Source: Chlorokybus atmophyticus
Taxonomy: Eukaryota > Plantae > Mesostigma and Chlorokybus algae
NCBI GenBank assembly: GCA_009103225.1
Contig: RHPI01002656.1
Coordinates: 124,001-188,000, forward strand
DNA length: 64,000 nt
Reading direction: 5' to 3'
Below the pieces are notes generated by a model. It ran no database searches. It was not told where the DNA came from and saw only the letters and a program-made list of their open reading frames with translations. Shown in pieces: positions 4,058 through 33,399 of the stretch. The position numbers were made by a program, and so were the translations under genes. The first letter of the stretch is position 1. Every line of letters starts with the position of its first letter.

Positions 4058-7000
4058 ATGAGTGCAGCTCTGGGCTTAGGTAGGTGGTAAGGTCAGAAGC
4101 AGCAGTTAGACCCAGCTGCTTGATTGTTGACTTGGCTAAGAGCGATGCTGCACGTGCTTGTTACCTTGTTGCCTTGACTGCGTGTCAAACTCGTTCAGGT
4201 GACTGGAAACTATGTGTCAACTGCTGCAGCTGTAATGTGTGAACAGAGCAGTAGCAGTATTGGCACGATAGGGCTTGAGGGCGTGCGTTTAACTTTTGAC
4301 ATGGCTCTACTGCAGGCTGGTTTCGTTCTTCCAGTAGCTGAAACTGTCTCTTTCTTTACATAGCGTAAGTGGCCGGGGAGTCAAGCCTCAGGGTGCCTGA
4401 ACATTCATAGCGTGCTGTCATGTACAGCTATATTGTTGCACTGCTTGTCTTGCGCAGCGCTTTGTGTTTATGTGACCTTGTGCAACATGCAGACAAGCGG
4501 TGCAACAAAGTAGCTGTTGCGGGATGGCGAAGACTGCAACAGAAAGCAGAAAACGGGTAAGACAGCCTTGGGTGACTGGACACTAGTTTTGTAAGCAACA
4601 GTGTGTTACAGCCACGGCGTGTACACTTATATTCTCGAATCTACACCAGTTGTGAACGCTGGACCCATGTACATGCAGTGTGATGCTGCCTATGGCTATG
4701 CATGTCGCTTATTTGCTTAGTTCATGCAGGATCTGCTTGCATTCTGGGCTGCTGCTGCTCCGGACAACCTCGCAGCATCACGCGAGCATGTAGTTAACGG
4801 ACGCTCCTCAAGCCAAGAAGAGGAGCAAGGCATGCCTTCCCAACCACGCACAACCGCACAGGCACAGGTAGGAGTTGATGCGCACATGGGACAGCCCCAG
4901 ACCAGAATGTTGTTGATGATGTGTCTTGACTAAGCCAACGTGTAGGACTCCAGACCCTTCCAGGCGAAGCACGTTTCATCACGAGGCAGCCTCGCGGATG
5001 ACCACCAGCTGCCTCCAGTGAGACTGGGCGGTGGGATTTTGGACAAGTTGCGTGCTGCGGAGTCCACCAGGGCAGAAGCTCAAAACAAGAACAAACCACT
5101 AGGTTTTTCTGATGCAGGTCAGTGGTTGCATAACACAGTCTCATGCCTGTTGCTGCAAGTCCTAAATAGGTGTGCGTTGCATGTAGATGAAGAGGAGCAG
5201 CATACACGAAGGAAGGCGTACGTCATGCCGCGCAGCAATGAGCCAGACCGGCGCAAGGTGCATGCACTAGATCTATCTACATGCAGCAAGCAAACACAAA
5301 CATTGACCACCGCTTATGCATTTGCCTCTTTGAACTTCGTGCACAGGAAATTGTTGGTAATCAGCAGACTGGATTGCGACAGCATCCATTTACAGCGCCA
5401 GCGCGTGGCACTCGCGAGGAGAAACCGCAGGACGTGCAGTTCTACACTGCTCGCCAGCAATTAGTACGCACTGCTCCAAGTCCTTTCAAGAACCTTACCA
5501 AAAGTGTTGCTTATGACTGTTGTGTTTGTTCGGCCGTGGCTATGGCAAAGTTGAACATGCTGTACATGTGTTTAACTTTAAGTCATGTTCTTCTGGTAAG
5601 CTGACTTCAGCTGGCCTCAGGCTCTGGAAAGAAAGCGCAAGCTACCAGATATTGATGAGAGTGATGAGCCAGAGCCAGCAACATCCTCCCGGGAACACGT
5701 GAAGCCTGCAGCCGCACCTTTCAGAGCACCCATAAGACAAGAAGGTAGCGCTCAACTCCGATGCTCGTGCGCACCTAGTTGTGGACAGCTCACCATCAGG
5801 AAGTCATACATTTAACAGCCAAGTGGTGATCTCTGTTAGCATTCACCTGTGTGCTGTGTGTTGGTAGCGCGCAATGGCGGTGGACAAGTCAGGGGAGGCT
5901 GCGTTGACGAGGATGGGAAGCCACTTCCTGAAAGGTGAGCACAACTCAACTCAATAACATCAAGCTGCAGAGGTGTTGCGGCGCTGATAGCAGTGTGCTG
6001 ATGCTCAGGTTGCAGCCGCTCCTCCTTCCCAATGGGGAGTTGCCTGATAAACTCAAACACATTGAGACACGCCTTCTGGAAATGGTTATGTCTGAAGTCT
6101 TGACCCAAGGGGAGACCATCACCTGGGACAGCATATGTAAGTTGCGTGGATGGGTGCCACACTGCTGCATCTCGGGGCTGCGTTCTGATGGCCGATTATG
6201 ATTCAGCTGGACTGAAGTACGCGAAGAGCACAGTCCAGCAGGCAATCATCTGGCCGCTGCTCAACCCCAGCATCTTCAAAGGTCCAAGAGCGCCACCAAA
6301 GGGCCTCCTGTTATTCGGGCCACCAGTGAGTCCCATTCACACTTGTCATCTTTTGACATATGCAGTACTTCATTGCAGTACTTCATTACGCACATCCTAT
6401 AATACAACTGGTACGGTCATATCTTGTTTGTAACTGTGCACAATTTGCGCTTGTCACAGGGCACAGGCAAGACTATGATAGGACGTGCTATTGCCAGTCA
6501 AGCAAATGCGACCTTCTTCAACATCTCAGCAAGCTCCTTGACAAGCAAATGGGTGCGTGCAGCTGTGTGTAATGTTACCAGCTAAGCATGTGTTTCACCA
6601 TCCAGTGCTTGCCGGCAGATTGGTGATGGCGAGAAGATGGTGCGAGCTCTCTTCGCACTTGCAAGCTGCATGCAACCAGCTGTCATATTTGTTGACGAGA
6701 TCGACTCCCTCCTTTCACAGGTACTGCAATGTGCATCTAAAACCACCATAGCATATAAAGGGTATGGTACTGTGCCAGAATGCATGGTGTGCGGACAATG
6801 TTAACGACATGCATCACAACATGCCTTCACAACTCATCACATAACAGTCCACCATGTGTGCGCATGATGTAGAGATGTACTGACACGAAGGCAAAGTCAC
6901 CCATGTGCATGTTGGCACTCATGATGTGCAATGCGCAGCGCAAGTCCGAGGGCGAGCATGAGTCAAGCAGACGCCTTAAGACCGAATTCCTAGTGCAGAT

Positions 7001-8079
7001 GGATGGGTGTGGCTCTGGTGCAGAAGAGCGCGTTGTGCTGGTCGGTATGTGCGTTTGGAGTTTAGCAAAGAACATGCGCCCACCACCAGTTGTTGTCCTT
7101 GACTAACATACCGTGATGCAAAGCAGTGTTTGGTAAGTGCAATAATCATCCCAAATGCCCTCAGGTGCCACCAACCGCCCTCAAGAGCTGGATGAAGCAG
7201 CACGCCGAAGGTTGCAGAAACGACTCTACATCCCGCTGCCTGGCAAAGGTGTGCAGTGCTTGGATTGTGTACGGTCAGAGGTGCATGCGTGTGATCCATG
7301 TGCGTGTCACAAAATGAACACCGCGGTGTCAATCAACACTTGCACATGCATGCAGATCACTCTTGTGTAGCTGATGTTTATATCAGATTAGGCCTAATCC
7401 TGTACAAATTGTAATCGTTGTTGTCGTACAGAGTGCAGTGACTGCATATTCTGACATGTGACATGCCTTCGCTGGTTGTGTTTGTCAATTGATGCAATAA
7501 CCATTTGTGCTATATACAGATGCCCGCAAGGACATTGTACAGCGTCAGCTTGTAGCGGACATTGAGCACACCCTTTCACCCGAAGACCTGATTGCAATTG
7601 CAGAAGCAACAAAAGGTCAAACAAGTCTGCATGTTTGCACGCGTTGCTACAGTGCTGCGCTCAATGCAGGCTGACCAAGACTGCACTGGTGCTTGCTGCA
7701 GGCTTCTCAGGAGCAGATATCCACCAGTTGATACGGGAGGCATGCATGTACCCTGTGCTGGAGCAAGACTGCATTGAGAACCTTACCAGCGCCGATCTCC
7801 GGCCCACAAGCTTGAAGGTGAGCCTTGCATCACAACGTTCAAAGCTGAAAGTTGACAAGAATGTCTCGTGGTAGATGGATCCGCAACCGCAGTATAATGT
7901 TCGTTGCATGTGCGGGTGGCAGTATGGTTGTTGCGTGGTTTTCATGTCTCACTTGGTGCTGACAGGATTTTCAAGACGCATTGTTTGCAATCAAGCCATC
8001 GGTTGCAGCAAGCGAACTCACTGCGTACGAGCAATGGAATGAACAGTTTGGTTCTGTGGGTATTGTTCGGGAAGATTAA
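4058..8079 (+). CDS. FIGL1: Fidgetin-like 1 AAA+ ATPase (multi-exon; start codon uncertain)
   Basis: Exons encode [13 protein letters not shown]...[51 protein letters not shown] (Walker A), [13 protein letters not shown] (Walker B), [55 protein letters not shown] and a Vps4_C-like end [10 protein letters not shown]...ED* (TAA 8077-8079). Confidence 0.9.
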
Positions 8080-9357
8080 CGCTTGCGTTGTAAGCTTAGC
8101 AGCGATAAGTAGCTAACGGTTGGATGATACCTGTGCAGCATTTGCACACAATTTCTGGCACTGTCCTCAAGGTGCGTTTCTGTTGGGTTCGAATGGAACG
8201 TCACAACATGCAGGTCGCATAGATATACGCTCATCTTCATGCACATACCTGTTGGTAGTAGGTCAAAAGCATATATGGGCAAGAGCTTGGGTGCGCAGTG
8301 CCACAGTAGGGACAGGCTTTTTCAGTACAGTGAGTAATGCGTACTGAGCAGTAGTGTACAGAAAATGCACGTGATGTATGTGTGTTCGTGCAACCACGAG
8401 TGGAAGCACACAATACAGGCTCTTCTGCATGTGCCACCGGACCAGGAGTTGCAGTATACGTTGGAATGCGTTGTTCGCCCACATGTGGGTGCACATGATG
8501 GCATCTTGGTATTCCTTCTTCATCTTGTACATCACATGGCACCACTGTCGGTCTTTGGTGCATGTTGATACGTGCGTTTTGTCAAGCGTTGACTGCAATG
8601 TGCGAGCGGGTCATGCTACTTCAGCAGGCATACACTTACGTGCACTACGTTGTATATGCAGCAAAGAGACATGTTTGAAAAGGTTCATTGTTATCGAGCC
8701 TGAAGTACCGAAAATGCTCAATTCGATGCAGTTTATGAACCATGCTGCATGCGTGGTGACTGCTCACTCACGAGTACAGCTGCGATTGGTACTTGTGTGC
8801 CTTGCAAAGACCGGAGGTCCTGTCTTTGCTAAAATGTACACTTGTCTTAAACCAAGCAACACAACCCCGTTTATCAACTGCACGCCCCTGTCCAGCAAGC
8901 AGTACTTGTAGAGATTGCATGAGCGTCATGCGGCAAGTACGATTGCTGATGCGGATATATACAAATGGCAAAGTCAGCCAACAACACCATGCAGGGGAGG
9001 GCAAGCACTATGACACAACCAGTGCACAGACTGCATTATGCGGATAGCTTGATGCAGGCAGCGTTGCCTTGGGTAAGCCTATTACTCTGCTGGTAGCGCT
9101 TGCGTGAGCAACACGGCTGCCAACGGGTGACTGAGTTTCCCTGGCTGCGGGTTGTGGTTTTCGGGAAACCGTTTCCCGCGCATCAATTTCGGCTGCAAAT
9201 GGGAGGATTGCCACTAGCTGCATCTGTGACCGTGAGAGCTTGACGCGACGCTTATCGTACGATTGCACGAAGAGACAAGCGGCTTGGCAGCATGCGACAG
9301 AAGGTGATGTGACACAAAGTTGGACAGCCGAGTAGCTTGTCCTTTGGGACACCTGAA

Positions 9358-9388
<31 letters not shown>

Positions 9389-9433
9389 GGCCCCTGCGCA
9401 AGGATGACACGCACAAATCGAGAAATGGTCCAA
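8076..9433 (-). CDS. Possible unidentified spliced gene convergent with FIGL1
   Basis: Several open exon-like segments (e.g. [34 protein letters not shown]; [22 protein letters not shown]) near splice-like sites. No family recognised and no complete model built. Confidence 0.2.
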
Positions 9434-10881
9434 ATGTTTTTCTCATTGCTTGAGGGGACTGGTACTGATAATGACCTGCGTACTGGTCAGCATTTTGTTT
9501 GGTGTGTGATTTTTCAGGATGTGATAGATTGACTCAAACGGTGCAGGCAGTCTTGCGTTGAAGTTAATGTGTCTGACGTAACTATTTATATATTTGTTTA
9601 AAACGCGCTTAATTGACTGTAACATCTGAGTACAGCAATAAAAGCGACTTTGTAAAGTCAACAAAATCATTTCAAAGTCGGTCTATTGATTTTTTACCAT
9701 ACACAAAAAGTGGCACCGCCGTTATGTCGCAGTGCATCAATTGCAGTGGCACATAAACAAGGCGATCGCATCGTCAAAAATGCAGTTGCCGATGGCGCCA
9801 TCAAAAACCCAAAGAATTTTTGATCGCCGGCAGCAACGGCGAACGACGATGGTGCAAGCAAGTGTTGCGCGCGTTTCGACAAACCGCGACAGTTTGCCAT
9901 AGACACGCGGTTCCATGGCAAACTGTCGCGGTTCTACAAAAGGCGTTTCTAGTGGTACGAGGTTGGTCGGCACCCCATACCCGCAACGAATCTTTTCAAC
10001 CATCATCACTAACAGCAATCGCACTCTTTGCGTAAAAATGAGATCTCATGATGCCTTAACCGTTGGGCTCTACAGCAGCCGAACAAGCTGCAAGGGTAGT
10101 ACAAGCTTATTGTAAAACTAGTATTTGTCTTTGTATACATAAGTCATTGCTCGATGTCAATATGTTCGATCATTCTATATCGAATGCATGTCAAAAGACC
10201 ATATATTATCATAGTACAATGACATGACTCGTGCAATCTCCCTTTTAACAGAATAGCCCATTCATTACCACAAGAGTTCAACTTGCAAAAATTATCATGT
10301 TGCCATTATTGAAGTAATAAGCGTTTTTTAAATAAGACATTGCGTCGGACTACAATGAGCGACTTTGTGTCGTATGCAATATTGTTTGTTGTTTAACATA
10401 TTAGCTCATTAACTAATGGAGATGCGTTACGGCAATGCAACTGGTTGAAGTTGATATTACTTGTCACCATTATTGTACAAGCATTATTATAATGCTTGTA
10501 CACGTGTATGCGCGGTACTAATAATCAACATTGCTGCGCGCATATGTGCCACATTTGCTTACGACCGTGACTACGATGTAGCTTGACGACATTGGTGAAC
10601 GCAGAATGCAAAATATTGCACTATAAATGAGTTGAAAGTATCCTTTCAACTCATATGTGGAGCAAACTACGGCACCGATGTCGTTTGCATTATAAATTCA
10701 TAAGGCAATCACTTGTATATTTTTTGCAATTTCTTAATACATATGTCACTTTGTGAGTGACATTACATGCAACGGGAACACTTCGTTGTCGCACCATTCA
10801 CTTTGCTAAATGGTGATAGTCAGTAGTATGACCGACCCGTTGCATTGAACTTCTTTGGTTAAACCCACACATTATTAACAT

Positions 10882-28700: not shown

Positions 28701-29453
28701 TGAACCTGAGCCCCGAGCAGAATGCCAGCATGAAACAGCAGGAGCAGCAACAAGTCCGGGCCCAGCCAACAGCCAGGCCCAAACTGGCTCCGTCAACCAC
28801 TCCGACCGAGTCGGAGCGCCCAGCAAAACAACCGGCCAAGCGTCTGACCCGGATCAAGCCGCTTGTCATCGCGGAAGGACAAGCAGTGGATCTGCCTGAG
28901 CGCGTTGAAGTCATCTGCGGCGATAGGCCAGGGTTCTACCTGCCACCTGTGAACATGTACGCCTGAGAACAGCGTGTCCCGATAACAACAACAACAGTAC
29001 TGGCCAAGCTTGGCCAGTACTGTTGTTGCTGTTGTGACACACTGCTGACACTACAACACCACTGCAGGTTTGAGTGCGCCTGCTCGGAATGCGTGCTGAC
29101 AGGTTCAACGCGGTGGTCTCCCTGCCAGTTTGAGGCGCACGGCGGTTTGCGCCGCAACAAGAAATGGCGAGCCTCTGTCCGCCTAAAGGAGACCAACCGT
29201 CCAATCGCGTACTGGGTAAGCCTCATGCTGCATGTTGCACACTTCACGCTAGAGCTTTGATATCGCGTGCAGTCAAAAGTGACCAAGCTCTCTCGTGCAG
29301 TTGGAAATGATCGGTGCAATGTGTCCCAAAAGAAAAAGTGCAGGCAAATGCGACGAGCAAGCTGGTCATGCAATGCAAATGGTGCATGCAGTCGAGGCCC
29401 CGTTGCAGCAGCTGACGGAGGCTCGCCCTCTCGACATCATCCAAGCGGCATGA
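22781..29453 (+). CDS. DME: DEMETER/ROS1-like 5-methylcytosine DNA glycosylase (HhH-GPD, 4Fe-4S, RRM_DME) with C-terminal SAND domain; 5' start uncertain
   Basis: Domain A GDRRFLMWNGSVVDSVVGAFLTQNVSDHLSSSAYMNLAAKYP; DWEAVASA...IKGRGMQGILAGRIQAFL; HhH GLGSKSIGC (catalytic K); FPVDTNI (catalytic D); LYELHYQMITLGKVFCSKQRPNCQACPLSSNC (C-x6-C-x2-C-x5-C); VPVRTALRGRFPLNGTYFQINEVF...VHFGSSVPSIFKG...FVCTRAYDKATGAPRPL; then SAND; stop TGA 29451-29453. Confidence 0.93.
28989..29028. repeat. Perfect 40-bp palindrome in DME intron
   Basis: CAACAACAGTACTGGCCAAG|CTTGGCCAGTACTGTTGTTG is its own reverse complement. Confidence 0.95.
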
Positions 29454-31095
29454 TGGTGTCCACTCTCACACAGCACACGTTGCAACATGTATAATAAGCA
29501 AAGCACCTGTGCTGCCACTGCACAGGTCAGTAAGTCTGTGCAAGATATGGGTGCAACAGAGAGTGGTCACCGTCGTTGACAAAGCGCATGTGCACTTATA
29601 TCTGTTTCTGGTTGTCATGGTGTGCAGGGCTTTGCTGCTTCTATTAGTGGCCAGCAGTCTCACTTCATCGCTGTACAACATAACAAGCAATATCGCACAA
29701 AGACCCCATCGGGTAGGTTGCTTGCGCCAGCACATAGCTGTTTATCAATACAATAGAAACACCAGTTGCCACCTGCTATAGGTGAATAGCATGAGTTAGC
29801 ATTCCTTGTCTAGTTCTTGTACATTCACATACCGTCCGTTGCAGAGAAGTTGCAGTTGCTACCCTAACCATCAGGCCAGTTGGCGTTTCATGTTTGCCTC
29901 AGTCATGCATGACCATTGTTGCGACGCTCAGCAGCAGATAGTGCGCTGGACAATTCGCCAGCTGATGACGTGATGATGCACGCATGACCATGATGGCACT
30001 GTTCAGCAGTGGACTCTACTACTGCTGTTTGTTCTTATTGAAGTGCAGTGGCTGCTGTCGTAGGGCTCCACCGTGGCTTGGCATGCTGTCTGTGTCACCT
30101 CCGCCGAGTGGCTTGAGCTCATGGTTGACAGATTAAACCGCGTTGCTATTGGCATTGCCGTGACACTTGTTGCATCGACTTAGTTTCAAGCACTACTGGC
30201 AGCATATCCTGTACATTGTTGTAGTCCTCAATCGGACATCAACTTTGATTTTCTGCAACTGAGGTATGTTGTCGAACAAGACTGGACAGGAAATGGTACT
30301 ACCTACGACTGGTGGCAACTTGTACATGTTCAGCAATGTACATCTACATACTGGCGCAAGTAGTCTATCTACTGGGGTCTCCGTGCATTATTGGTTGTTG
30401 TGTCATACGGTGATAGATCGGGACTGGCCAGCAGTAGTAAAGACATGCACAACAAGGCAAACATAAACAGCTCCTTGTAAGCGCGCATGTTGAGTGTTAC
30501 CAACCGCAACAATCGCATCTTGCACAACCCCCACTCGCATGTGCTTTGTTCATGACAATGTTGCAATGTTTGTGCCCTCTGAGTGAGTCGCCACCATCAC
30601 GCTGCTTGGTTGATGTTGAACGGGGGCGAGTCTTGGTCAGGTCAACACTGCCAATTGCAGAAGAGAGAGGACTGTGCCTCGGAGTGAGAACAAACTGTTC
30701 TTACTCATTCCGAGTGCACACCATTCAGAAAGTGGGCGAGCCTCTGGTGGGTGTGATATATACGCACCGCGCGCTAGCTTCCACGTTGTTGACGACGCGT
30801 TGGCATCCGCTGCGAGGAGTGTCTCTCGACCCGACGACACCGACAGCACTGGCGGACGTCGCTGCTTTGACTTTGGATGAAGCGCTTGTGTAGGTAGTTG
30901 TGTAGCTAGCCGCCGTAGCGCTGTTAGCTTGAGTATGACCCGGTGGACCCTGTTGCCCAGGTGATGTATTGATTGATTCCAAAGTGAGTTACAGACCTAC
31001 TATGTTTGCGAACAATACAAGTAAGTGTTAGAGGTGTCCAATCTTTCAACGCAATGCAAACGCAGCAAGACTCACTGATGAGTTGGATAGGCCTC

Positions 31096-31232
31096 ATGCT
31101 GCATGAGGCGTACCCAACACACGCGATTGGGCGGGTTTGTGCGTCCGTGTTGGGCGGACAGAAGAAGAAGCTTGCCACTCCTTGTTGCGGCGCAAACCGC
31201 CGTGCGGTGTAAAACTGGCAGGGAGTCCATTG
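31096..31232 (-). pseudogene. Degenerate inverted copy of the DME SAND exon plus its splice donor
   Basis: Reverse complement reads TGGACTCCCTGCCAGTTTTACACCGCACGGCGGTTTGCGCCGCAACAAG...CCAATCGCG...TGGGTACGCCTCATGCAGCATG. The original at ~29110-29231 reads TGGTCTCCCTGCCAGTTTGAGGCGCACGGCGGTTTGCGCCGCAACAAG...CCAATCGCG...TGGGTAAGCCTCATGCTGCATG. The copy has a +1 frameshift. Confidence 0.85.
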
Positions 31233-31670
31233 TGTGCGTCTCGCAAGAAGATTAGTCTCTCGCTTAACCACCAGTCGGAGGCGTTTCGGACTAAGTGTGC
31301 TGCTGGTGAAGTAGCAGTGGTGGCGGCGGTGGTAAGTGGAGGTTGTTTTATTGGAAGCCTGTGTTAGCTGCTAATCAGTCAAGAGCGCATGCATCATTGT
31401 CAGTCGTCGCTGTATAATGCGTGGGGCTTCGGGCTTCGTCTTGTGCACAATATGACCGGAAAACGCCTCTGTGGCTTGCTGACAAGCACGACAATATACC
31501 ATTAACCGTTGTAGACTCGTTACTATGCAATCCTTGCATTGGCGTTTCGACCAGTTGAGCTGTGCGTGCATGCATGTGTACGCGTTACTGGCTCATTCCT
31601 TGATTGCCTGTGCCTGTGCAGAGAGCAATTGCCTTAGGCAGCAGAAAAGCGGAAATATATATACTACGAC

Positions 31671-32649
31671 ATGACCAGTGCAGCCCGCAAACGGAAACAG
31701 CCGCACAGCGTGGATGACGTTGAAGGCTCCGGCAAGCGAAGAGGGCGCACCGCTGTTGCTGCATCTGAGACAGATGTGCGTGTGCGTGCGTGCACTGCGT
31801 CAGACTTAGGCTGCATTGTAACAATCGTGGTACGTGTTGTTATGCAGGATGTGGATGAAAGGCTGGAGGCGGCCATCCTCGCGATACTGCGCAAGCGTAA
31901 ACCCACGAGCTCCTGCTGACCTTCAGAGGTGAGGTCACCCGTGCAGTTGCATTGTGACTCCTGAGCATATGTTACAAGCTCAGGAGTCGCAATGTGACTC
32001 CTGAGCATGTGGTGTCGCCTGCATGTAAGCTCATGTTTCGTCACACACCCCTCCTACGCTGCACGCGTTCAGTGTGTGCCTGCGTTGCTATTTGTACTTG
32101 CAATCGTGGCTGTGCTATGGTATGGCTGGCATACTTTGTCAATCTAGCAGCATTTGAAGAAGTGTGTGCACGTGCGTGTCAACAGACACACGCATGCGCA
32201 TGTGCGCAGACACATGCAGGCGAGCCGCATCAGCACATTGTACACCTGATGAATTGCTATGTCATGCGTCGCATGAGGTATTGTGGCCCCTAGGACACGT
32301 ATTACGACTGCTGCCCTTGCACTGATCCTACCACCGTATTGGTTGGGCAGCTAGAAGTTAGTCATTGAGCCTCCTTGTGCGGAATACACATGTTGCACGT
32401 GTCCCGCAGGCGGCCAGGGCGGTGGATCCCGCGGGCTGGCGCGACTTGATGGACGCCACGCGCGAGGCGGCGCGGCGCTTGGCCAGGAGAGGTCTCATCG
32501 CCATCACGCAGCGCGGGGAGACTCGAGACCCGGACGCGCCGTTCAAGGGACCCATTCGGCTGCGCATCAAAGTGTCTGCAGCTGCCAGTGACGATGTGGG
32601 TGCAACAAGTGTGGGTGAGGGTGCAGATGTTTACGAAGCAGGCACCTGA
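31671..32649 (+). CDS. DUF3253-family protein with in-frame UGA (31917-31919), predicted selenoprotein; exons 31671-31775, 31848-31928, 32410-32649 (141 aa, C58-U59)
   Basis: Spliced translation ...LEAAILAILRKRKPTSSC*PSE/AARAVDPAGWRDLMDATREAARRLARRGLIAITQRGETRDPDAPFKGPIRLRIK. It aligns end to end with the recalled DUF3253 consensus (I..LL..R....TICPSEVARAL...WR.LM..VR.AARRLA..G.I.ITQKG..VDP....GPIRLR). The GAG|GTGAG donor and CGCAG acceptor are both phase 0. Confidence 0.9.
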
Positions 32650-32694
32650 TGCGTGCACGTTGACTGTTTAGTAGAGTTGTAGTAGCGGTGCGTA

Positions 32695-32765
32695 GGCAGA
32701 CGTGTGACGGTCCTGACCTCAAACAGAGGCAAACTCTGCGGTCTCGGGACTCGAGTGGTCCTGCC
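32695..32765 (+). promoter_or_regulatory. Candidate form II SECIS element in 3' UTR of the DUF3253 gene
   Basis: Helix I GGCAGAC/GT(C)CTGCC. Core GUGAC (32704-32708) opposite CGAG (32752-32755). Helix II GGTCCTGACC/GG(TC)TCGGGACT (10 bp with a 2-nt bulge). Unpaired AAA at 32721-32723 sits 12 nt after the quartet. Helix III CAGAG/CTCTG closes a GCAAA loop. Confidence 0.8.
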
Positions 32766-33399
32766 ATGCCCCTGCCACACAGCAATTTTGGGCAAGTCTT
32801 GCCATATGGTAGGTGGGATGAGGCAACTACTAGCAACATTAAAAGTACTATGTGTTGCAATGATACCGTGCAGCAGGTAACAGCTATAGTATGACACCCA
32901 GATAATTACAACAGAATGACAGTAGAATTACACGTTTGCAAGTTTGCAAAGCATGGGTTGCCCCCAAGATGCCTGCCATTGGCTACACTGTGTTGCGCGT
33001 CTACAACAGGTCCTTGAATTGCCCGCTGGTAGTGCACCACCATCATTGTTTGGTCTGAATCTGCAAAGCATTGCATATAACTAGTTGATGAATCTCCATG
33101 ACTCCAGGGATGTTGGTATTGTGTCATTGTCACTGTGCTAGCGCCAATCATTTTATGCTCCTCATTCCCATAACTATACTGACGTGATAGGCTCGTTGCC
33201 ATTGTGTTGGCAAGTATTAATCTTTACTTTGTTGTTGTCTGCCAGGTTGGCTGGGCGAACATGAATCTGGTAACATATGCAATCAAACTGTTACAAAGAG
33301 GGGAGGAACTGCATTGCATGAACTCCTGCAGAAACCAAACATACAGCCACGGCGTTCGCGAGCAACCTTCCATAGACAACCAGAGCTTGTCACAGGCAC

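What the first reader, a model, noticed from the sequence alone, without database searches (positions are those of the whole stretch)
31671..32765. Candidate new selenoprotein family: DUF3253 protein with in-frame UGA (Cys-Sec) and a 3' UTR SECIS
Seen: exon 2 reads ...AGC TCC TGC TGA CCT TCA GAG|GTGAG, and splicing in phase 0 to exon 3 restores the rest of a DUF3253 domain. The UGA falls where the family has the conserved Cys of its (T/S)xCPSE motif, giving SSCUPSE. Coding conservation continues for ~60 codons after the UGA. A form II SECIS-like structure starts 46 nt after the real stop (GUGA core, 12 nt to an unpaired AAA, helix III, GA on the 3' strand, helix I). Established: eukaryotic Sec insertion needs an in-frame UGA plus a 3' UTR SECIS; Sec typically aligns to a conserved Cys of homologs; many green algae keep the Sec machinery. 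Inference: a 141-aa selenoprotein with a vicinal CU motif in a small, reportedly winged-helix-like domain, with basic NLS-like motifs (RKRK, KRRGR). It could be a nuclear redox-sensing nucleic-acid-binding selenoprotein outside the usual thioredoxin-fold classes. I am not aware of DUF3253 in described selenoproteomes but could not search. Caveat: the 3' half of the quartet (CGAG) departs from the strict KGAW pattern.
Basis: partly seen in the sequence, partly recalled or inferred. Interest (0 to 1): 0.95.

Follow-up and report, generated by a model that had tools for sequence, protein, structure and literature searches.

The report
New selenoprotein family: winged-helix DUF3253
This three-exon gene of the alga Chlorokybus very probably makes a small winged-helix protein that has selenocysteine where its bacterial relatives have an invariant cysteine. 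The same UGA codon occurs in a Chlamydomonas species, a haptophyte and marine metagenome contigs, so this looks like an undescribed, widespread eukaryotic selenoprotein family.

Summary
An RNA contig from an independent study matches all three exons without a mismatch. It shows both splice junctions and keeps the in-frame TGA (31917-31919). Read through, the 141-aa protein covers the whole DUF3253 profile, and the TGA sits on a Cys that is invariant in 53 of 53 bacterial homologs.

Seven other eukaryotic sequences carry TGA at the same column. They include Chlamydomonas schloesseri, a contig assigned to the haptophyte Diacronema lutheri, and Tara and other metagenome contigs. In six of them, as in the window, a Cys comes directly before the TGA (a C-U pair). 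The moss Ceratodon and the alga Monoraphidium have Cys there instead.

A related Chlorokybus transcript differs after the TGA almost only at synonymous sites. The 3' UTR holds a form II SECIS-like hairpin with a GUGA core, the best such hit in the window. Three homologs have SECIS-like hairpins 30-235 nt after their stops. Published work reports a complete Sec machinery in Chlorokybus.

Weak points:
- The SECIS core is UGAC/CGAG, not the UGAN/KGAW consensus.
- Rfam finds no SECIS.
- Selenium incorporation is untested.
- The function is unknown.

No paper searched mentions DUF3253. Earlier scan notes list other selenoprotein candidates in this genome, but none for DUF3253.

The parts
31332..31621 (+). 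Intron in the 5' UTR. An upstream non-coding exon ends at 31331 and joins 31622.
   Evidence: The loose ends of RNA contigs in runs X1 and X2 read ...GGCGGCGGT, the sequence at 31301-31330. The donor is GTAAGT at 31332 and the acceptor AG at 31620-31621.
31622..31670 (+). Last part of the 5' UTR, with an in-frame TAG at 31635-31637 upstream of the ATG.
   Evidence: The TAG makes the ATG at 31671 the first start codon possible in this frame.
31671..31775 (+). Coding exon A: 35 aa, a basic N-terminal extension (RKRK ... KRRGR) that resembles a bipartite nuclear localisation signal.
   Evidence: Translation. The junction 31775|31848 is present in the RNA contig. The localisation signal is an inference from the sequence.
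31776..31847 (+). Intron 1 (72 nt, GT..AG).
   Evidence: joint 31775 to 31848.
31848..31928 (+). Coding exon B: the first helix of the DUF3253 domain and the SSC-U-PSE motif.
   Evidence: This reading frame restores the RLEAAILAIL match to the family.
31917..31919 (+). In-frame UGA, read as selenocysteine 59. It lies 9 nt before the last exon junction.
   Evidence: The TGA is present in the RNA contig with 0 mismatches. It aligns to the invariant Cys. TGA is seen at the same column in seven other eukaryotic sequences.
31929..32409 (+). Intron 2 (481 nt, GT..AG). It contains an inverted-repeat hairpin at 31935-32015.
   Evidence: joint, cut position ambiguous by 2 nt; hairpin, with weak miRNA-model hits below the curated thresholds.
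32410..32649 (+). Coding exon C: the rest of the DUF3253 domain (54 aa), an acidic and Ala-rich tail, and the stop TGA at 32647-32649.
   Evidence: The Chlorokybus variant in run X4 differs here almost only at synonymous sites.
32650..32938 (+). 3' UTR.
   Evidence: RNA contigs from two studies end at 32938-32940.
32695..32765 (+). Form II SECIS-like element. Lower helix 32695-32701 / 32758-32765. Core GUGA 32704-32707 opposite GA 32753-32754. Helix II 32709-32718 / 32740-32751. Unpaired AAA 32721-32723. Mini-stem 32724-32738.
   Evidence: It is the best hit of a SECISearch-style scan of both strands of the window. None of 78 hits in 2.56 Mb of shuffled sequence was as good. The SECIS-compatible fold costs only 0.2 kcal/mol more than the minimum-energy fold. 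Rfam does not recognise it.

Best explanation
This is a real selenoprotein gene. The spliced mRNA encodes a 141-aa protein with three parts: a basic N-terminal extension, a DUF3253 winged-helix domain and a short acidic tail. The UGA at codon 59 is decoded as selenocysteine. This is directed by a form II, GUGA-type SECIS hairpin in the 3' UTR, through the usual eukaryotic machinery (SBP2, eEFSec, tRNA-Sec).

Sec replaces the one invariant Cys of the family. That residue sits at the N-terminal cap of the second helix of the helix-turn-helix. In the eukaryotic clade it is preceded by another Cys, so the working centre is most likely a vicinal Cys-Sec (selenenylsulfide) redox pair on a nucleic-acid-binding scaffold.

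Shown here: the gene model, the UGA in mRNA, the Sec/Cys alignment, conservation of the UGA across distant eukaryotes, purifying selection after the UGA, SECIS-like hairpins and the fold of the family.

Inferred: actual Sec insertion, the redox chemistry, nuclear location and nucleic-acid binding.
For: 1. mRNA. A 1699-nt RNA contig at depth about 140 carries both junctions and the TGA with no mismatch.

2. Homology across the UGA. The bacterial HMM is covered at positions 2-82 of 83, at 110 bits. The annotated model that avoids the TGA scores 80 bits. The TGA column is Cys in 53 of 53 bacterial homologs.

3. The same TGA in seven other eukaryotic sequences:
- L012...KTC-U-PSE. Its 81-aa product clusters at 90% identity with a Diacronema lutheri EukProt protein.
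- L014.
- L015: A-U, C-terminal to a JmjC ORF.
- L017.
- L016: Chlamydomonas schloesseri, with the TGA split TG|A by an intron.
- L018.
- L019: a Tara contig.

4. Cys at that column in Ceratodon purpureus (M-C) and Monoraphidium minutum (C-C).

5. Selection. The variant transcript in run X4 has 12 listed differences in exon C, and together they change one amino acid (Ala to Val). Eleven of 12 are synonymous in context; P is about 3e-6 against random substitution.

6. SECIS. The window's hairpin is the best hit on either strand. Shuffles give 3.9 hits per 128 kb and none as good in 2.56 Mb. L012 (AUGAA/UGAA, form I), L014 (AUGAC/CGAC) and L018 (AUGAA/GGAU) have SECIS-like hairpins 30, 52 and 235 nt after their stops. 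L014 and the partial L015 share the window's UGACGG 5' arm, and L014 also shares the C before the 3' GA. G before UGA and long mini-stems are the rule in Ostreococcus SECIS elements (PMC2375036).

7. Machinery. Chlorokybus CCAC 0220 is reported to have eEFSec, PSTK, SBP2, SecS and three selenoproteins of known families (PMC6627142).
Against: - The 3' half of the core is CGAG, not the KGAW consensus given in PMC3753652. A C-C mismatch follows the tandem G-A pairs.
- Rfam's SECIS models give no hit even at E<=10 on 151 nt.
- With a relaxed scanner, 7-15% of shuffled 300-nt 3' regions give some hit and 2-6% give one as stable, so each single SECIS is only moderate evidence.
- No SECIS with the AA motif was found downstream of the C. 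schloesseri gene (1.3 kb scanned) or in the 188 nt available for L019.
- The base at the TGA in the X4 variant could not be read. There is one unlisted mismatch somewhere in 31900-31926.
- No labelling or mass-spectrometry data exist.
- The transcript has a leader of roughly 980 nt whose meaning is unknown.
Confidence: 0.9

Rival explanations
1. The gene is a pseudogene or carries a nonsense allele. A Cys codon mutated to TGA, translation stops at codon 59, and the downstream hairpin is a coincidence.
For: TGC or TGT to TGA is a single change. The UGA lies 9 nt before the last exon junction, so by the 50-nt rule known from mammals (my own knowledge) the mRNA could escape nonsense-mediated decay and still be abundant. 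The SECIS core departs from the consensus and Rfam does not see it.
Against: The same TGA occurs at the same column in seven other sequences from distant eukaryotes. There is no other defect in the gene. Exon C is under strong purifying selection. SECIS-like hairpins occur in the window and in three homologs. The preceding residue changed to Cys only in the eukaryotic clade, where it pairs with U or C.
Confidence: 0.02
2. The UGA is read through without selenium. A near-cognate tRNA inserts Cys, Trp or Arg at the leaky UGA-C context, or a programmed stop gives two products.
For: UGA followed by C is the weakest termination context in eukaryotes (my own knowledge), and every member has UGA-CCN. 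The window's SECIS is not canonical.
Against: Conserved read-through at an invariant catalytic-type Cys column, in organisms that use Sec, with Cys in organisms that do not, is the pattern of Sec/Cys pairs. L012 and L018 have canonical AUGA...AA...(U/G)GA(A/U) elements. Inefficient read-through would make little protein from a gene kept under purifying selection.
Confidence: 0.04
3. It is a true selenoprotein but not a new family. It may already be catalogued under another name, for example the family called 'Hypo' in the algal selenoprotein database, or among unpublished Seblastian candidates.
For: The 2020 survey lists a 'Hypo: hypothetical selenoprotein' family without describing it in the text. 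Supplement S5 of the SECISearch3 paper (186 candidates) is not held in the library.
Against: No paper in 8.4 million full texts contains DUF3253 or PF11625. The three Ostreococcus hypothetical selenoproteins are PUB-, PITH- and membrane-type proteins, not DUF3253. The 2020 survey scanned its families for conserved domains, and neither it nor any other paper mentions DUF3253. The public gene models of Chlorokybus, Diacronema and C. schloesseri all avoid or truncate at the TGA.
Confidence: 0.1

Closest known systems
Bacterial DUF3253 proteins (Pfam PF11625; crystal structure PDB 2NS0, Rhodococcus RHA04536, function unknown)
   Same: The domain is the same over its full length, with 57-66% identity in the part after the UGA. 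The conserved columns are the same (P, S, A, R, W, R, L, G, D, G, P, R). The fold is a winged helix.
   Different: The bacterial proteins have Cys, never TGA. A pattern scan of 185,579 species genomes found no Sec form, though only versions with Ile or Val before the TGA were searched. They have Ile or Val, not Cys, before that residue, and no basic N-terminal extension. Many are fused to a DUF2256 zinc ribbon. They show no conserved gene neighbourhood.
Vicinal Cys-Sec centres: the C-terminal GCUG of animal thioredoxin reductase, and the GCUG / CUGR ends of the Ostreococcus PUB and PITH selenoproteins
   Same: Adjacent Cys and Sec can form a selenenylsulfide. The thioredoxin reductase chemistry is from my own knowledge.
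   Different: In those proteins the pair sits on a flexible C-terminal tail. Here it is internal, at the N-terminal cap of a helix inside a winged-helix domain. One member (L015) has Ala-Sec instead.
MDP, the methylated-DNA-protein-cysteine methyltransferase-like selenoprotein of algae
   Same: It is a selenoprotein outside the thioredoxin fold, listed for algae (PMC7539508). By my own knowledge, Sec there replaces the acceptor Cys on a DNA-binding helix-turn-helix scaffold.
   Different: The family and motif are unrelated (PCHR type against CPSE type). No alkyl-transfer function is indicated for DUF3253.
SELENOH
   Same: It is a small selenoprotein, nuclear and DNA-binding with a redox motif (my own knowledge).
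   Different: SELENOH has a thioredoxin-like fold, a CxxU motif and an AT-hook. DUF3253 is a winged helix with a C-U pair.
Green-algal SECIS elements (Ostreococcus, Chlamydomonas)
   Same: They have G before the UGA core and a long mini-stem (form II), as reported in PMC2375036.
   Different: The window's 3' core is CGAG with a C-C mismatch after the quartet. L014 shares this feature (CGAC), but the other family members found here do not.

Membership tests
Eukaryotic selenoprotein (SECIS-dependent UGA recoding) | In-frame UGA retained in the mature mRNA | tested here: met
   The RNA contig of run X1 spans 31621-32938 across both junctions with 0 mismatches, TGA included.
Eukaryotic selenoprotein (SECIS-dependent UGA recoding) | The UGA aligns with Cys (or Sec) in homologs | tested here: met
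   The column is Cys in 53 of 53 bacterial homologs and in Ceratodon and Monoraphidium. It is TGA in seven other eukaryotic sequences.
Eukaryotic selenoprotein (SECIS-dependent UGA recoding) | Coding conservation continues after the UGA | tested here: met
   57 codons after the UGA match the family HMM. In the X4 variant, 11 of 12 listed substitutions are synonymous in context.
Eukaryotic selenoprotein (SECIS-dependent UGA recoding) | A stem-loop in the 3' UTR with a UGA / GA tandem core, unpaired AA 10-13 nt after the base that follows UGA, helix II and helix I | tested here: met
   Element at 32695-32765. It is the best hit of a SECISearch-style scan, and none of 78 hits in 2.56 Mb of shuffles was as good. 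The SECIS-compatible fold is within 0.2 kcal/mol of the minimum-energy fold.
Eukaryotic selenoprotein (SECIS-dependent UGA recoding) | Agreement with the curated SECIS consensus (UGAN/KGAW core) and models | tested here: inconclusive
   The core is UGAC/CGAG (against PMC3753652). Rfam gives no hit at E<=10. PMC3753652 states that non-metazoan SECIS elements are the hardest to predict. SECISearch3 itself could not be run.
Eukaryotic selenoprotein (SECIS-dependent UGA recoding) | Sec machinery (tRNA-Sec, SecS, PSTK, SPS, eEFSec, SBP2) in the genome | not tested
   Only this window is available, and it has no tRNA gene. PMC6627142 reports the machinery as complete in Chlorokybus atmophyticus CCAC 0220.
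Eukaryotic selenoprotein (SECIS-dependent UGA recoding) | Selenium is actually incorporated | not testable with these tools
   This needs 75Se labelling or mass spectrometry.
DUF3253 (Pfam PF11625) | Score above the Pfam gathering cut-off | tested here: met
   Exon C alone scores 52.5 bits against a cut-off of 22.1. The read-through protein scores 110 bits on a family HMM over positions 2-82 of 83.
DUF3253 (Pfam PF11625) | The invariant family residues (C-P-S, A-R, W-R, L, G, D, G-P-x-R) | tested here: met
   All are present. The Cys position is the UGA.
DUF3253 (Pfam PF11625) | Winged-helix fold as in PDB 2NS0 | tested here: inconclusive
   This was shown for the bacterial homolog P0003 (pLDDT 95, TM 0.94 to 2NS0).

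The most novel reading that the evidence does not exclude
DUF3253-Sec is an ancient eukaryotic selenoprotein, present in streptophyte algae, chlorophytes and haptophytes and kept as a Cys protein in land plants. It works in the nucleus as a winged-helix protein whose nucleic-acid or chromatin interaction is coupled to a Cys-Sec selenenylsulfide centre. By extension, the invariant Cys of the whole bacterial DUF3253 family would be a catalytic redox residue.
Probability: 0.35. Interest if true: 0.8.

Novelty: new member of a known kind. Interest (0 to 1): 0.72.

Why it matters
New eukaryotic selenoprotein families are now rarely found. The 2020 survey of 137 algae added three. This family was missed because the Chlorokybus survey (PMC6627142) searched only with profiles of known families, and because gene callers hide it: all three public gene models examined cut out or truncate at the UGA.

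It would add a winged-helix family to selenoproteomes that are dominated by thioredoxin-like folds. It would raise the count for Chlorokybus, the lineage most distant from land plants among streptophytes, above the three selenoproteins reported so far. The Sec form in algae and the Cys form in a moss give a clean example of Sec-to-Cys replacement on the way to land.

Sec usually replaces catalytic redox Cys residues, so the finding also gives a first functional lead for DUF3253. That family has had a crystal structure since 2006 and still has no known function.

Tried and rejected
- **Rfam.** cmscan at E<=10 on 2.5 kb and on 151 nt gave no SECIS hit.
- **Bacterial Sec forms.** A pattern scan for [I/V]-TGA-P-S-[E/D]-A-A-R-A-V in 185,579 species genomes gave six hits. 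All were out-of-frame chance matches in another gene. The pattern would miss C-TGA forms.
- **Metagenome relatives.** The search for related loci with exon C in JGI metagenomes returned one relative at 51% identity.
- **Bacterial gene neighbourhoods.** Those of P0003, P0004 and P0012 have nothing in common.
- **ESM Atlas.** It returned only bacterial DUF3253 clusters.
- **SECIS alignment.** MAFFT plus RNAalifold on four SECIS candidates gave no consensus structure, because the sequence alignment is not structural. No covariation test was therefore possible.
- **Phylogeny.** A tree on 78 columns is largely unresolved. All 11 eukaryotic rows fall within one 27-row part of the tree, but monophyly and the origin of the eukaryotic clade cannot be decided. 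Some rows I labelled bacterial may themselves be eukaryotic.
- **Missing SECIS elements.** None with the AA motif was found for C. schloesseri (L016) or L019. A long UGACGG-containing hairpin at L016 3944-4067 is only a candidate.
- **Other SECIS-like hits in the window.** Hits at 5935, 7192, 15227, 46708 and 55994 match the number expected by chance. The two I inspected (5935, 7192) lie among ORFs that by eye look like AAA-ATPase exons.
- **The X4 variant.** Its base at the TGA could not be read, because mismatches near contig ends are not listed and only one read-laying run is allowed.
Full report
**What is in the window**

The region 31671-32649 (+) holds a three-exon gene.
- Exon A is 31671-31775 and exon B is 31848-31928.
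- Exon B ends ...KPTSSC-TGA-PSE, with the TGA at 31917-31919.
- Exon C is 32410-32649 and joins in phase 0.
- Read through, the product is 141 aa with the UGA at codon 59.

The organism is the streptophyte alga Chlorokybus. The exon C protein is identical to the C-terminus of EukProt/JGI model Chlat1 8285. That annotated model (P0001) avoids the TGA by reading exons A and B in another frame and adding a small exon taken from the intron.

**Transcript evidence**

Contigs of four public runs were laid on 31400-33100.
- An RNA contig of run X1 (1699 nt, depth about 140) matches 31621-31775, 31848-31926 and 32408-32938 without a single mismatch. The run comes from a 2021 study, not from the genome project.
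The TGA is in the mRNA, and the annotated model is wrong.
- The transcript ends near 32938, as contigs from two studies show. It has a further upstream non-coding exon that ends at 31331 and joins 31622.
- An in-frame TAG at 31635-31637 makes the ATG at 31671 the first possible start.

**Homology across the UGA**

- Exon C alone matches Pfam DUF3253 at E 6e-14, profile positions 26-80 of 81.
- An HMM built from 25 bacterial members aligns to the read-through protein over positions 2-82 of 83 at 110 bits. The annotated model scores 80 bits.
- In an alignment with 53 bacterial homologs, the TGA falls without any gap on a column that is Cys in all 53. It is followed by invariant Pro-Ser.

**The decisive result: the same UGA elsewhere**

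An exhaustive phmmer search with exon C returned 414 cluster representatives. Several are short ORFs that begin at the conserved Met of the WRxLM motif. That is what a gene caller produces when a stop codon lies just upstream. I fetched the DNA for these.

| Locus | Source | Motif at the column | Notes |
|---|---|---|---|
| L012 | JGI metagenome, 6.3 kb | KTC-TGA-PSE | Carries HOP/STI1 and Myb genes. Its product clusters at 90% identity with a Diacronema lutheri (haptophyte) EukProt protein, whose public model cuts out the TGA segment. |
| L014 | ENA metagenome | KTC-TGA-PSE | |
| L015 | Logan assembly | KTA-TGA-PSE | Directly C-terminal to a 527-aa Cupin_8/JmjC ORF, so a fusion protein. |
| L017 | ENA metagenome | KTC-TGA-PSE | |
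| L018 | Logan assembly | STC-TGA-PSE | |
| L019 | Tara Oceans metagenome, 66% GC | KSC-TGA-PSE | |
| L016 | Chlamydomonas schloesseri genome | STC-TG\|A-PSE | The codon is split by a GT..AG intron. The NCBI model starts at the Met after it. |

The stop at this column is TGA in every case.

Close eukaryotic relatives have Cys instead:
- Ceratodon purpureus, a moss, has STM-C-PSE, with an intron right after PSEA, close to the Chlorokybus intron position.
- Monoraphidium minutum has ATC-C-PSE. Its congener M. neglectum is reported to have an incomplete Sec machinery.
- An unnamed alga-like sequence, P0059, also has ATC-C-PSE.

Both named Cys forms are full-length DUF3253 matches in Pfam. Eight independent sequences from at least three eukaryotic groups therefore share the UGA. 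The residue before it is Cys in seven of the eight, and never Cys in the 53 bacterial proteins (I 46, V 4, T 2, M 1).

**Selection after the UGA**

Run X4 carries the same organism label but a sequence about 10% different. It uses the same exon B/C junction and has an unspliced form with a different intron. Of its 12 listed differences in exon C, all but one are synonymous in context. The encoded domain differs by a single Ala to Val change. The probability of at least 11 synonymous changes out of 12 under random substitution is about 3e-6.

**The SECIS**

The minimum-energy fold of 32680-32785 already has the SECIS shape. A fold that leaves the GUGA / GA core and the AAA unpaired costs only 0.2 kcal/mol more.

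I wrote a SECISearch-style scanner with these requirements: an A or G before UGA, one base then 10-13 nt to AA, at least 8 pairs in helix II, and a lower helix.
- It finds six hits on the two strands of the window, and this element is the best of them.
- Dinucleotide shuffles give 3.9 hits per 128 kb. None of the 78 hits in 2.56 Mb is as good.

A relaxed version drops the lower-helix requirement and accepts any base before UGA.
- It finds elements 30, 52 and 235 nt after the stops of L012 (AUGAA/UGAA, form I), L014 (AUGAC/CGAC, form II) and L018 (AUGAA/GGAU, form II).
- It is much less specific. Between 7% and 15% of shuffled 300-nt regions give a hit, and 2-6% give one as stable. The strength lies in four of the five loci with enough 3' sequence having one.
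- L014 and the truncated L015 share the window's UGACGG 5' arm, and L014 also shares the C before the 3' GA. The odd UGAC/CGAN core therefore recurs within the family.

Lobanov et al. report that nearly all Ostreococcus SECIS elements have G before the core and a long mini-stem (PMC2375036).

Points against:
- The core departs from the UGAN/KGAW consensus (PMC3753652).
- Rfam finds nothing.
- I found no AA-type SECIS for C. schloesseri or for L019.

**Machinery and literature**

Liang et al. 2019 report eEFSec, PSTK, SBP2 and SecS in the Chlorokybus atmophyticus CCAC 0220 genome. They found three selenoproteins there using Selenoprofiles, that is, known families only (PMC6627142).
- No paper in the library contains DUF3253 or PF11625.
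- The 42 families of 'The algal selenoproteomes' do not include it, and Chlorokybus was not analysed there.
- The three Ostreococcus 'hypothetical' selenoproteins are PUB-, PITH- and membrane-type proteins.
- The one loose end is the undescribed 'Hypo' family of the 2020 survey.
- Earlier notes of this scan list other selenoprotein candidates in this genome, some with GUGA-type SECIS. None mentions DUF3253.

**What the protein is and how it may work**

The family has a solved structure of unknown function, PDB 2NS0.
- An AlphaFold model of the bacterial member P0003 (pLDDT 95) superposes on 2NS0 at TM 0.94.
- Its next-best matches are winged-helix DNA-binding domains such as Fur/PerR, MarR, Z-alpha and ScpA, at TM 0.58-0.66 and weak E-values.
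- The invariant Cys sits immediately before the second helix, so at its N-terminal cap. By my own knowledge this is a position that lowers thiol pKa.

Sec normally replaces catalytic redox Cys residues. An adjacent Cys-Sec pair is the redox centre of thioredoxin reductase (my own knowledge), and the Ostreococcus PUB and PITH selenoproteins end in GCUG and CUGR.

Several eukaryotic members have short basic stretches at the N-terminus, and one is fused to a JmjC domain:
- window: RKRK...KRRGR
- C. schloesseri: KRGK...PPKRPAR
- L019: PKRKR
- Ceratodon: KRPK...KIKRRR

My best reading is a nuclear winged-helix protein with a selenenylsulfide-forming C-U centre. It would be either a small oxidoreductase acting on a nucleic-acid-bound or chromatin-bound partner, or a redox switch of its own binding. 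All of this is inference. Bacterial gene neighbourhoods gave no help.

**Limits**

- The tree is unresolved, so I cannot say whether the eukaryotic genes come from one ancient acquisition.
- No bacterial Sec form was found, but the scan was narrow.
- The X4 base at the UGA is unknown.
- Selenium incorporation has not been shown for any member.

**Verdict**

This is very probably a true selenoprotein (about 0.9). It represents a eukaryotic selenoprotein family that I could not find described anywhere.

Noticed in passing
window 9339-9439 (+): A U6 spliceosomal snRNA gene (Rfam RF00026, 100 bits, E 7e-25).
   Followed up: no
window 29060-29215 (+) and about 31094-31246 (-): An exon encoding a SAND domain (Pfam PF01342, E 3e-6) lies at the end of the upstream gene. 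A partial inverted copy, with a 22-nt exact inverted repeat (29137 against 31183), lies upstream of the 5' UTR exon end at 31331, possibly within the DUF3253 transcript's leader.
   Followed up: partly
window about 30400-31670: The DUF3253 RNA contig extends about 934 nt beyond 31621, so the mRNA seems to have a leader of roughly 980 nt with an intron (31332-31621). I saw no convincing upstream ORF. Whether this is one transcript or an assembly join with a neighbouring transcript is open.
   Followed up: partly
window 31935-32015 (+): A near-perfect inverted repeat (hairpin) inside intron 2. It gives weak hits to animal miRNA models far below their thresholds, and part of it was used as a bogus exon in the public gene model.
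   Followed up: no
L015 86-1876: In one uncultured eukaryote the Sec-containing DUF3253 domain is fused to the C-terminus of a 527-aa Cupin_8/JmjC protein. Here the residue before Sec is Ala, not Cys.
   Followed up: partly
L012, L016, window: All three public gene models examined hide the UGA. The Chlorokybus model shifts frame and adds a small exon. The Diacronema lutheri model (EP00963 P004563) cuts out the C-U-PSE segment as a fake intron. The C. schloesseri model (HYH02_007137) starts at the Met after the UGA.
   Followed up: yes
L016 2744 | 2979: In Chlamydomonas schloesseri the Sec codon is split TG|A by an intron. Searches for in-frame TGA within single exons would miss it.
   Followed up: partly
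window 5900-7400 (+): Two SECIS-like pattern hits (5935, 7192) lie among ORFs that by eye look like AAA-ATPase coding exons. Pfam gave no hit on the one ORF tested. The number of such hits in the window matches the chance expectation.
   Followed up: partly
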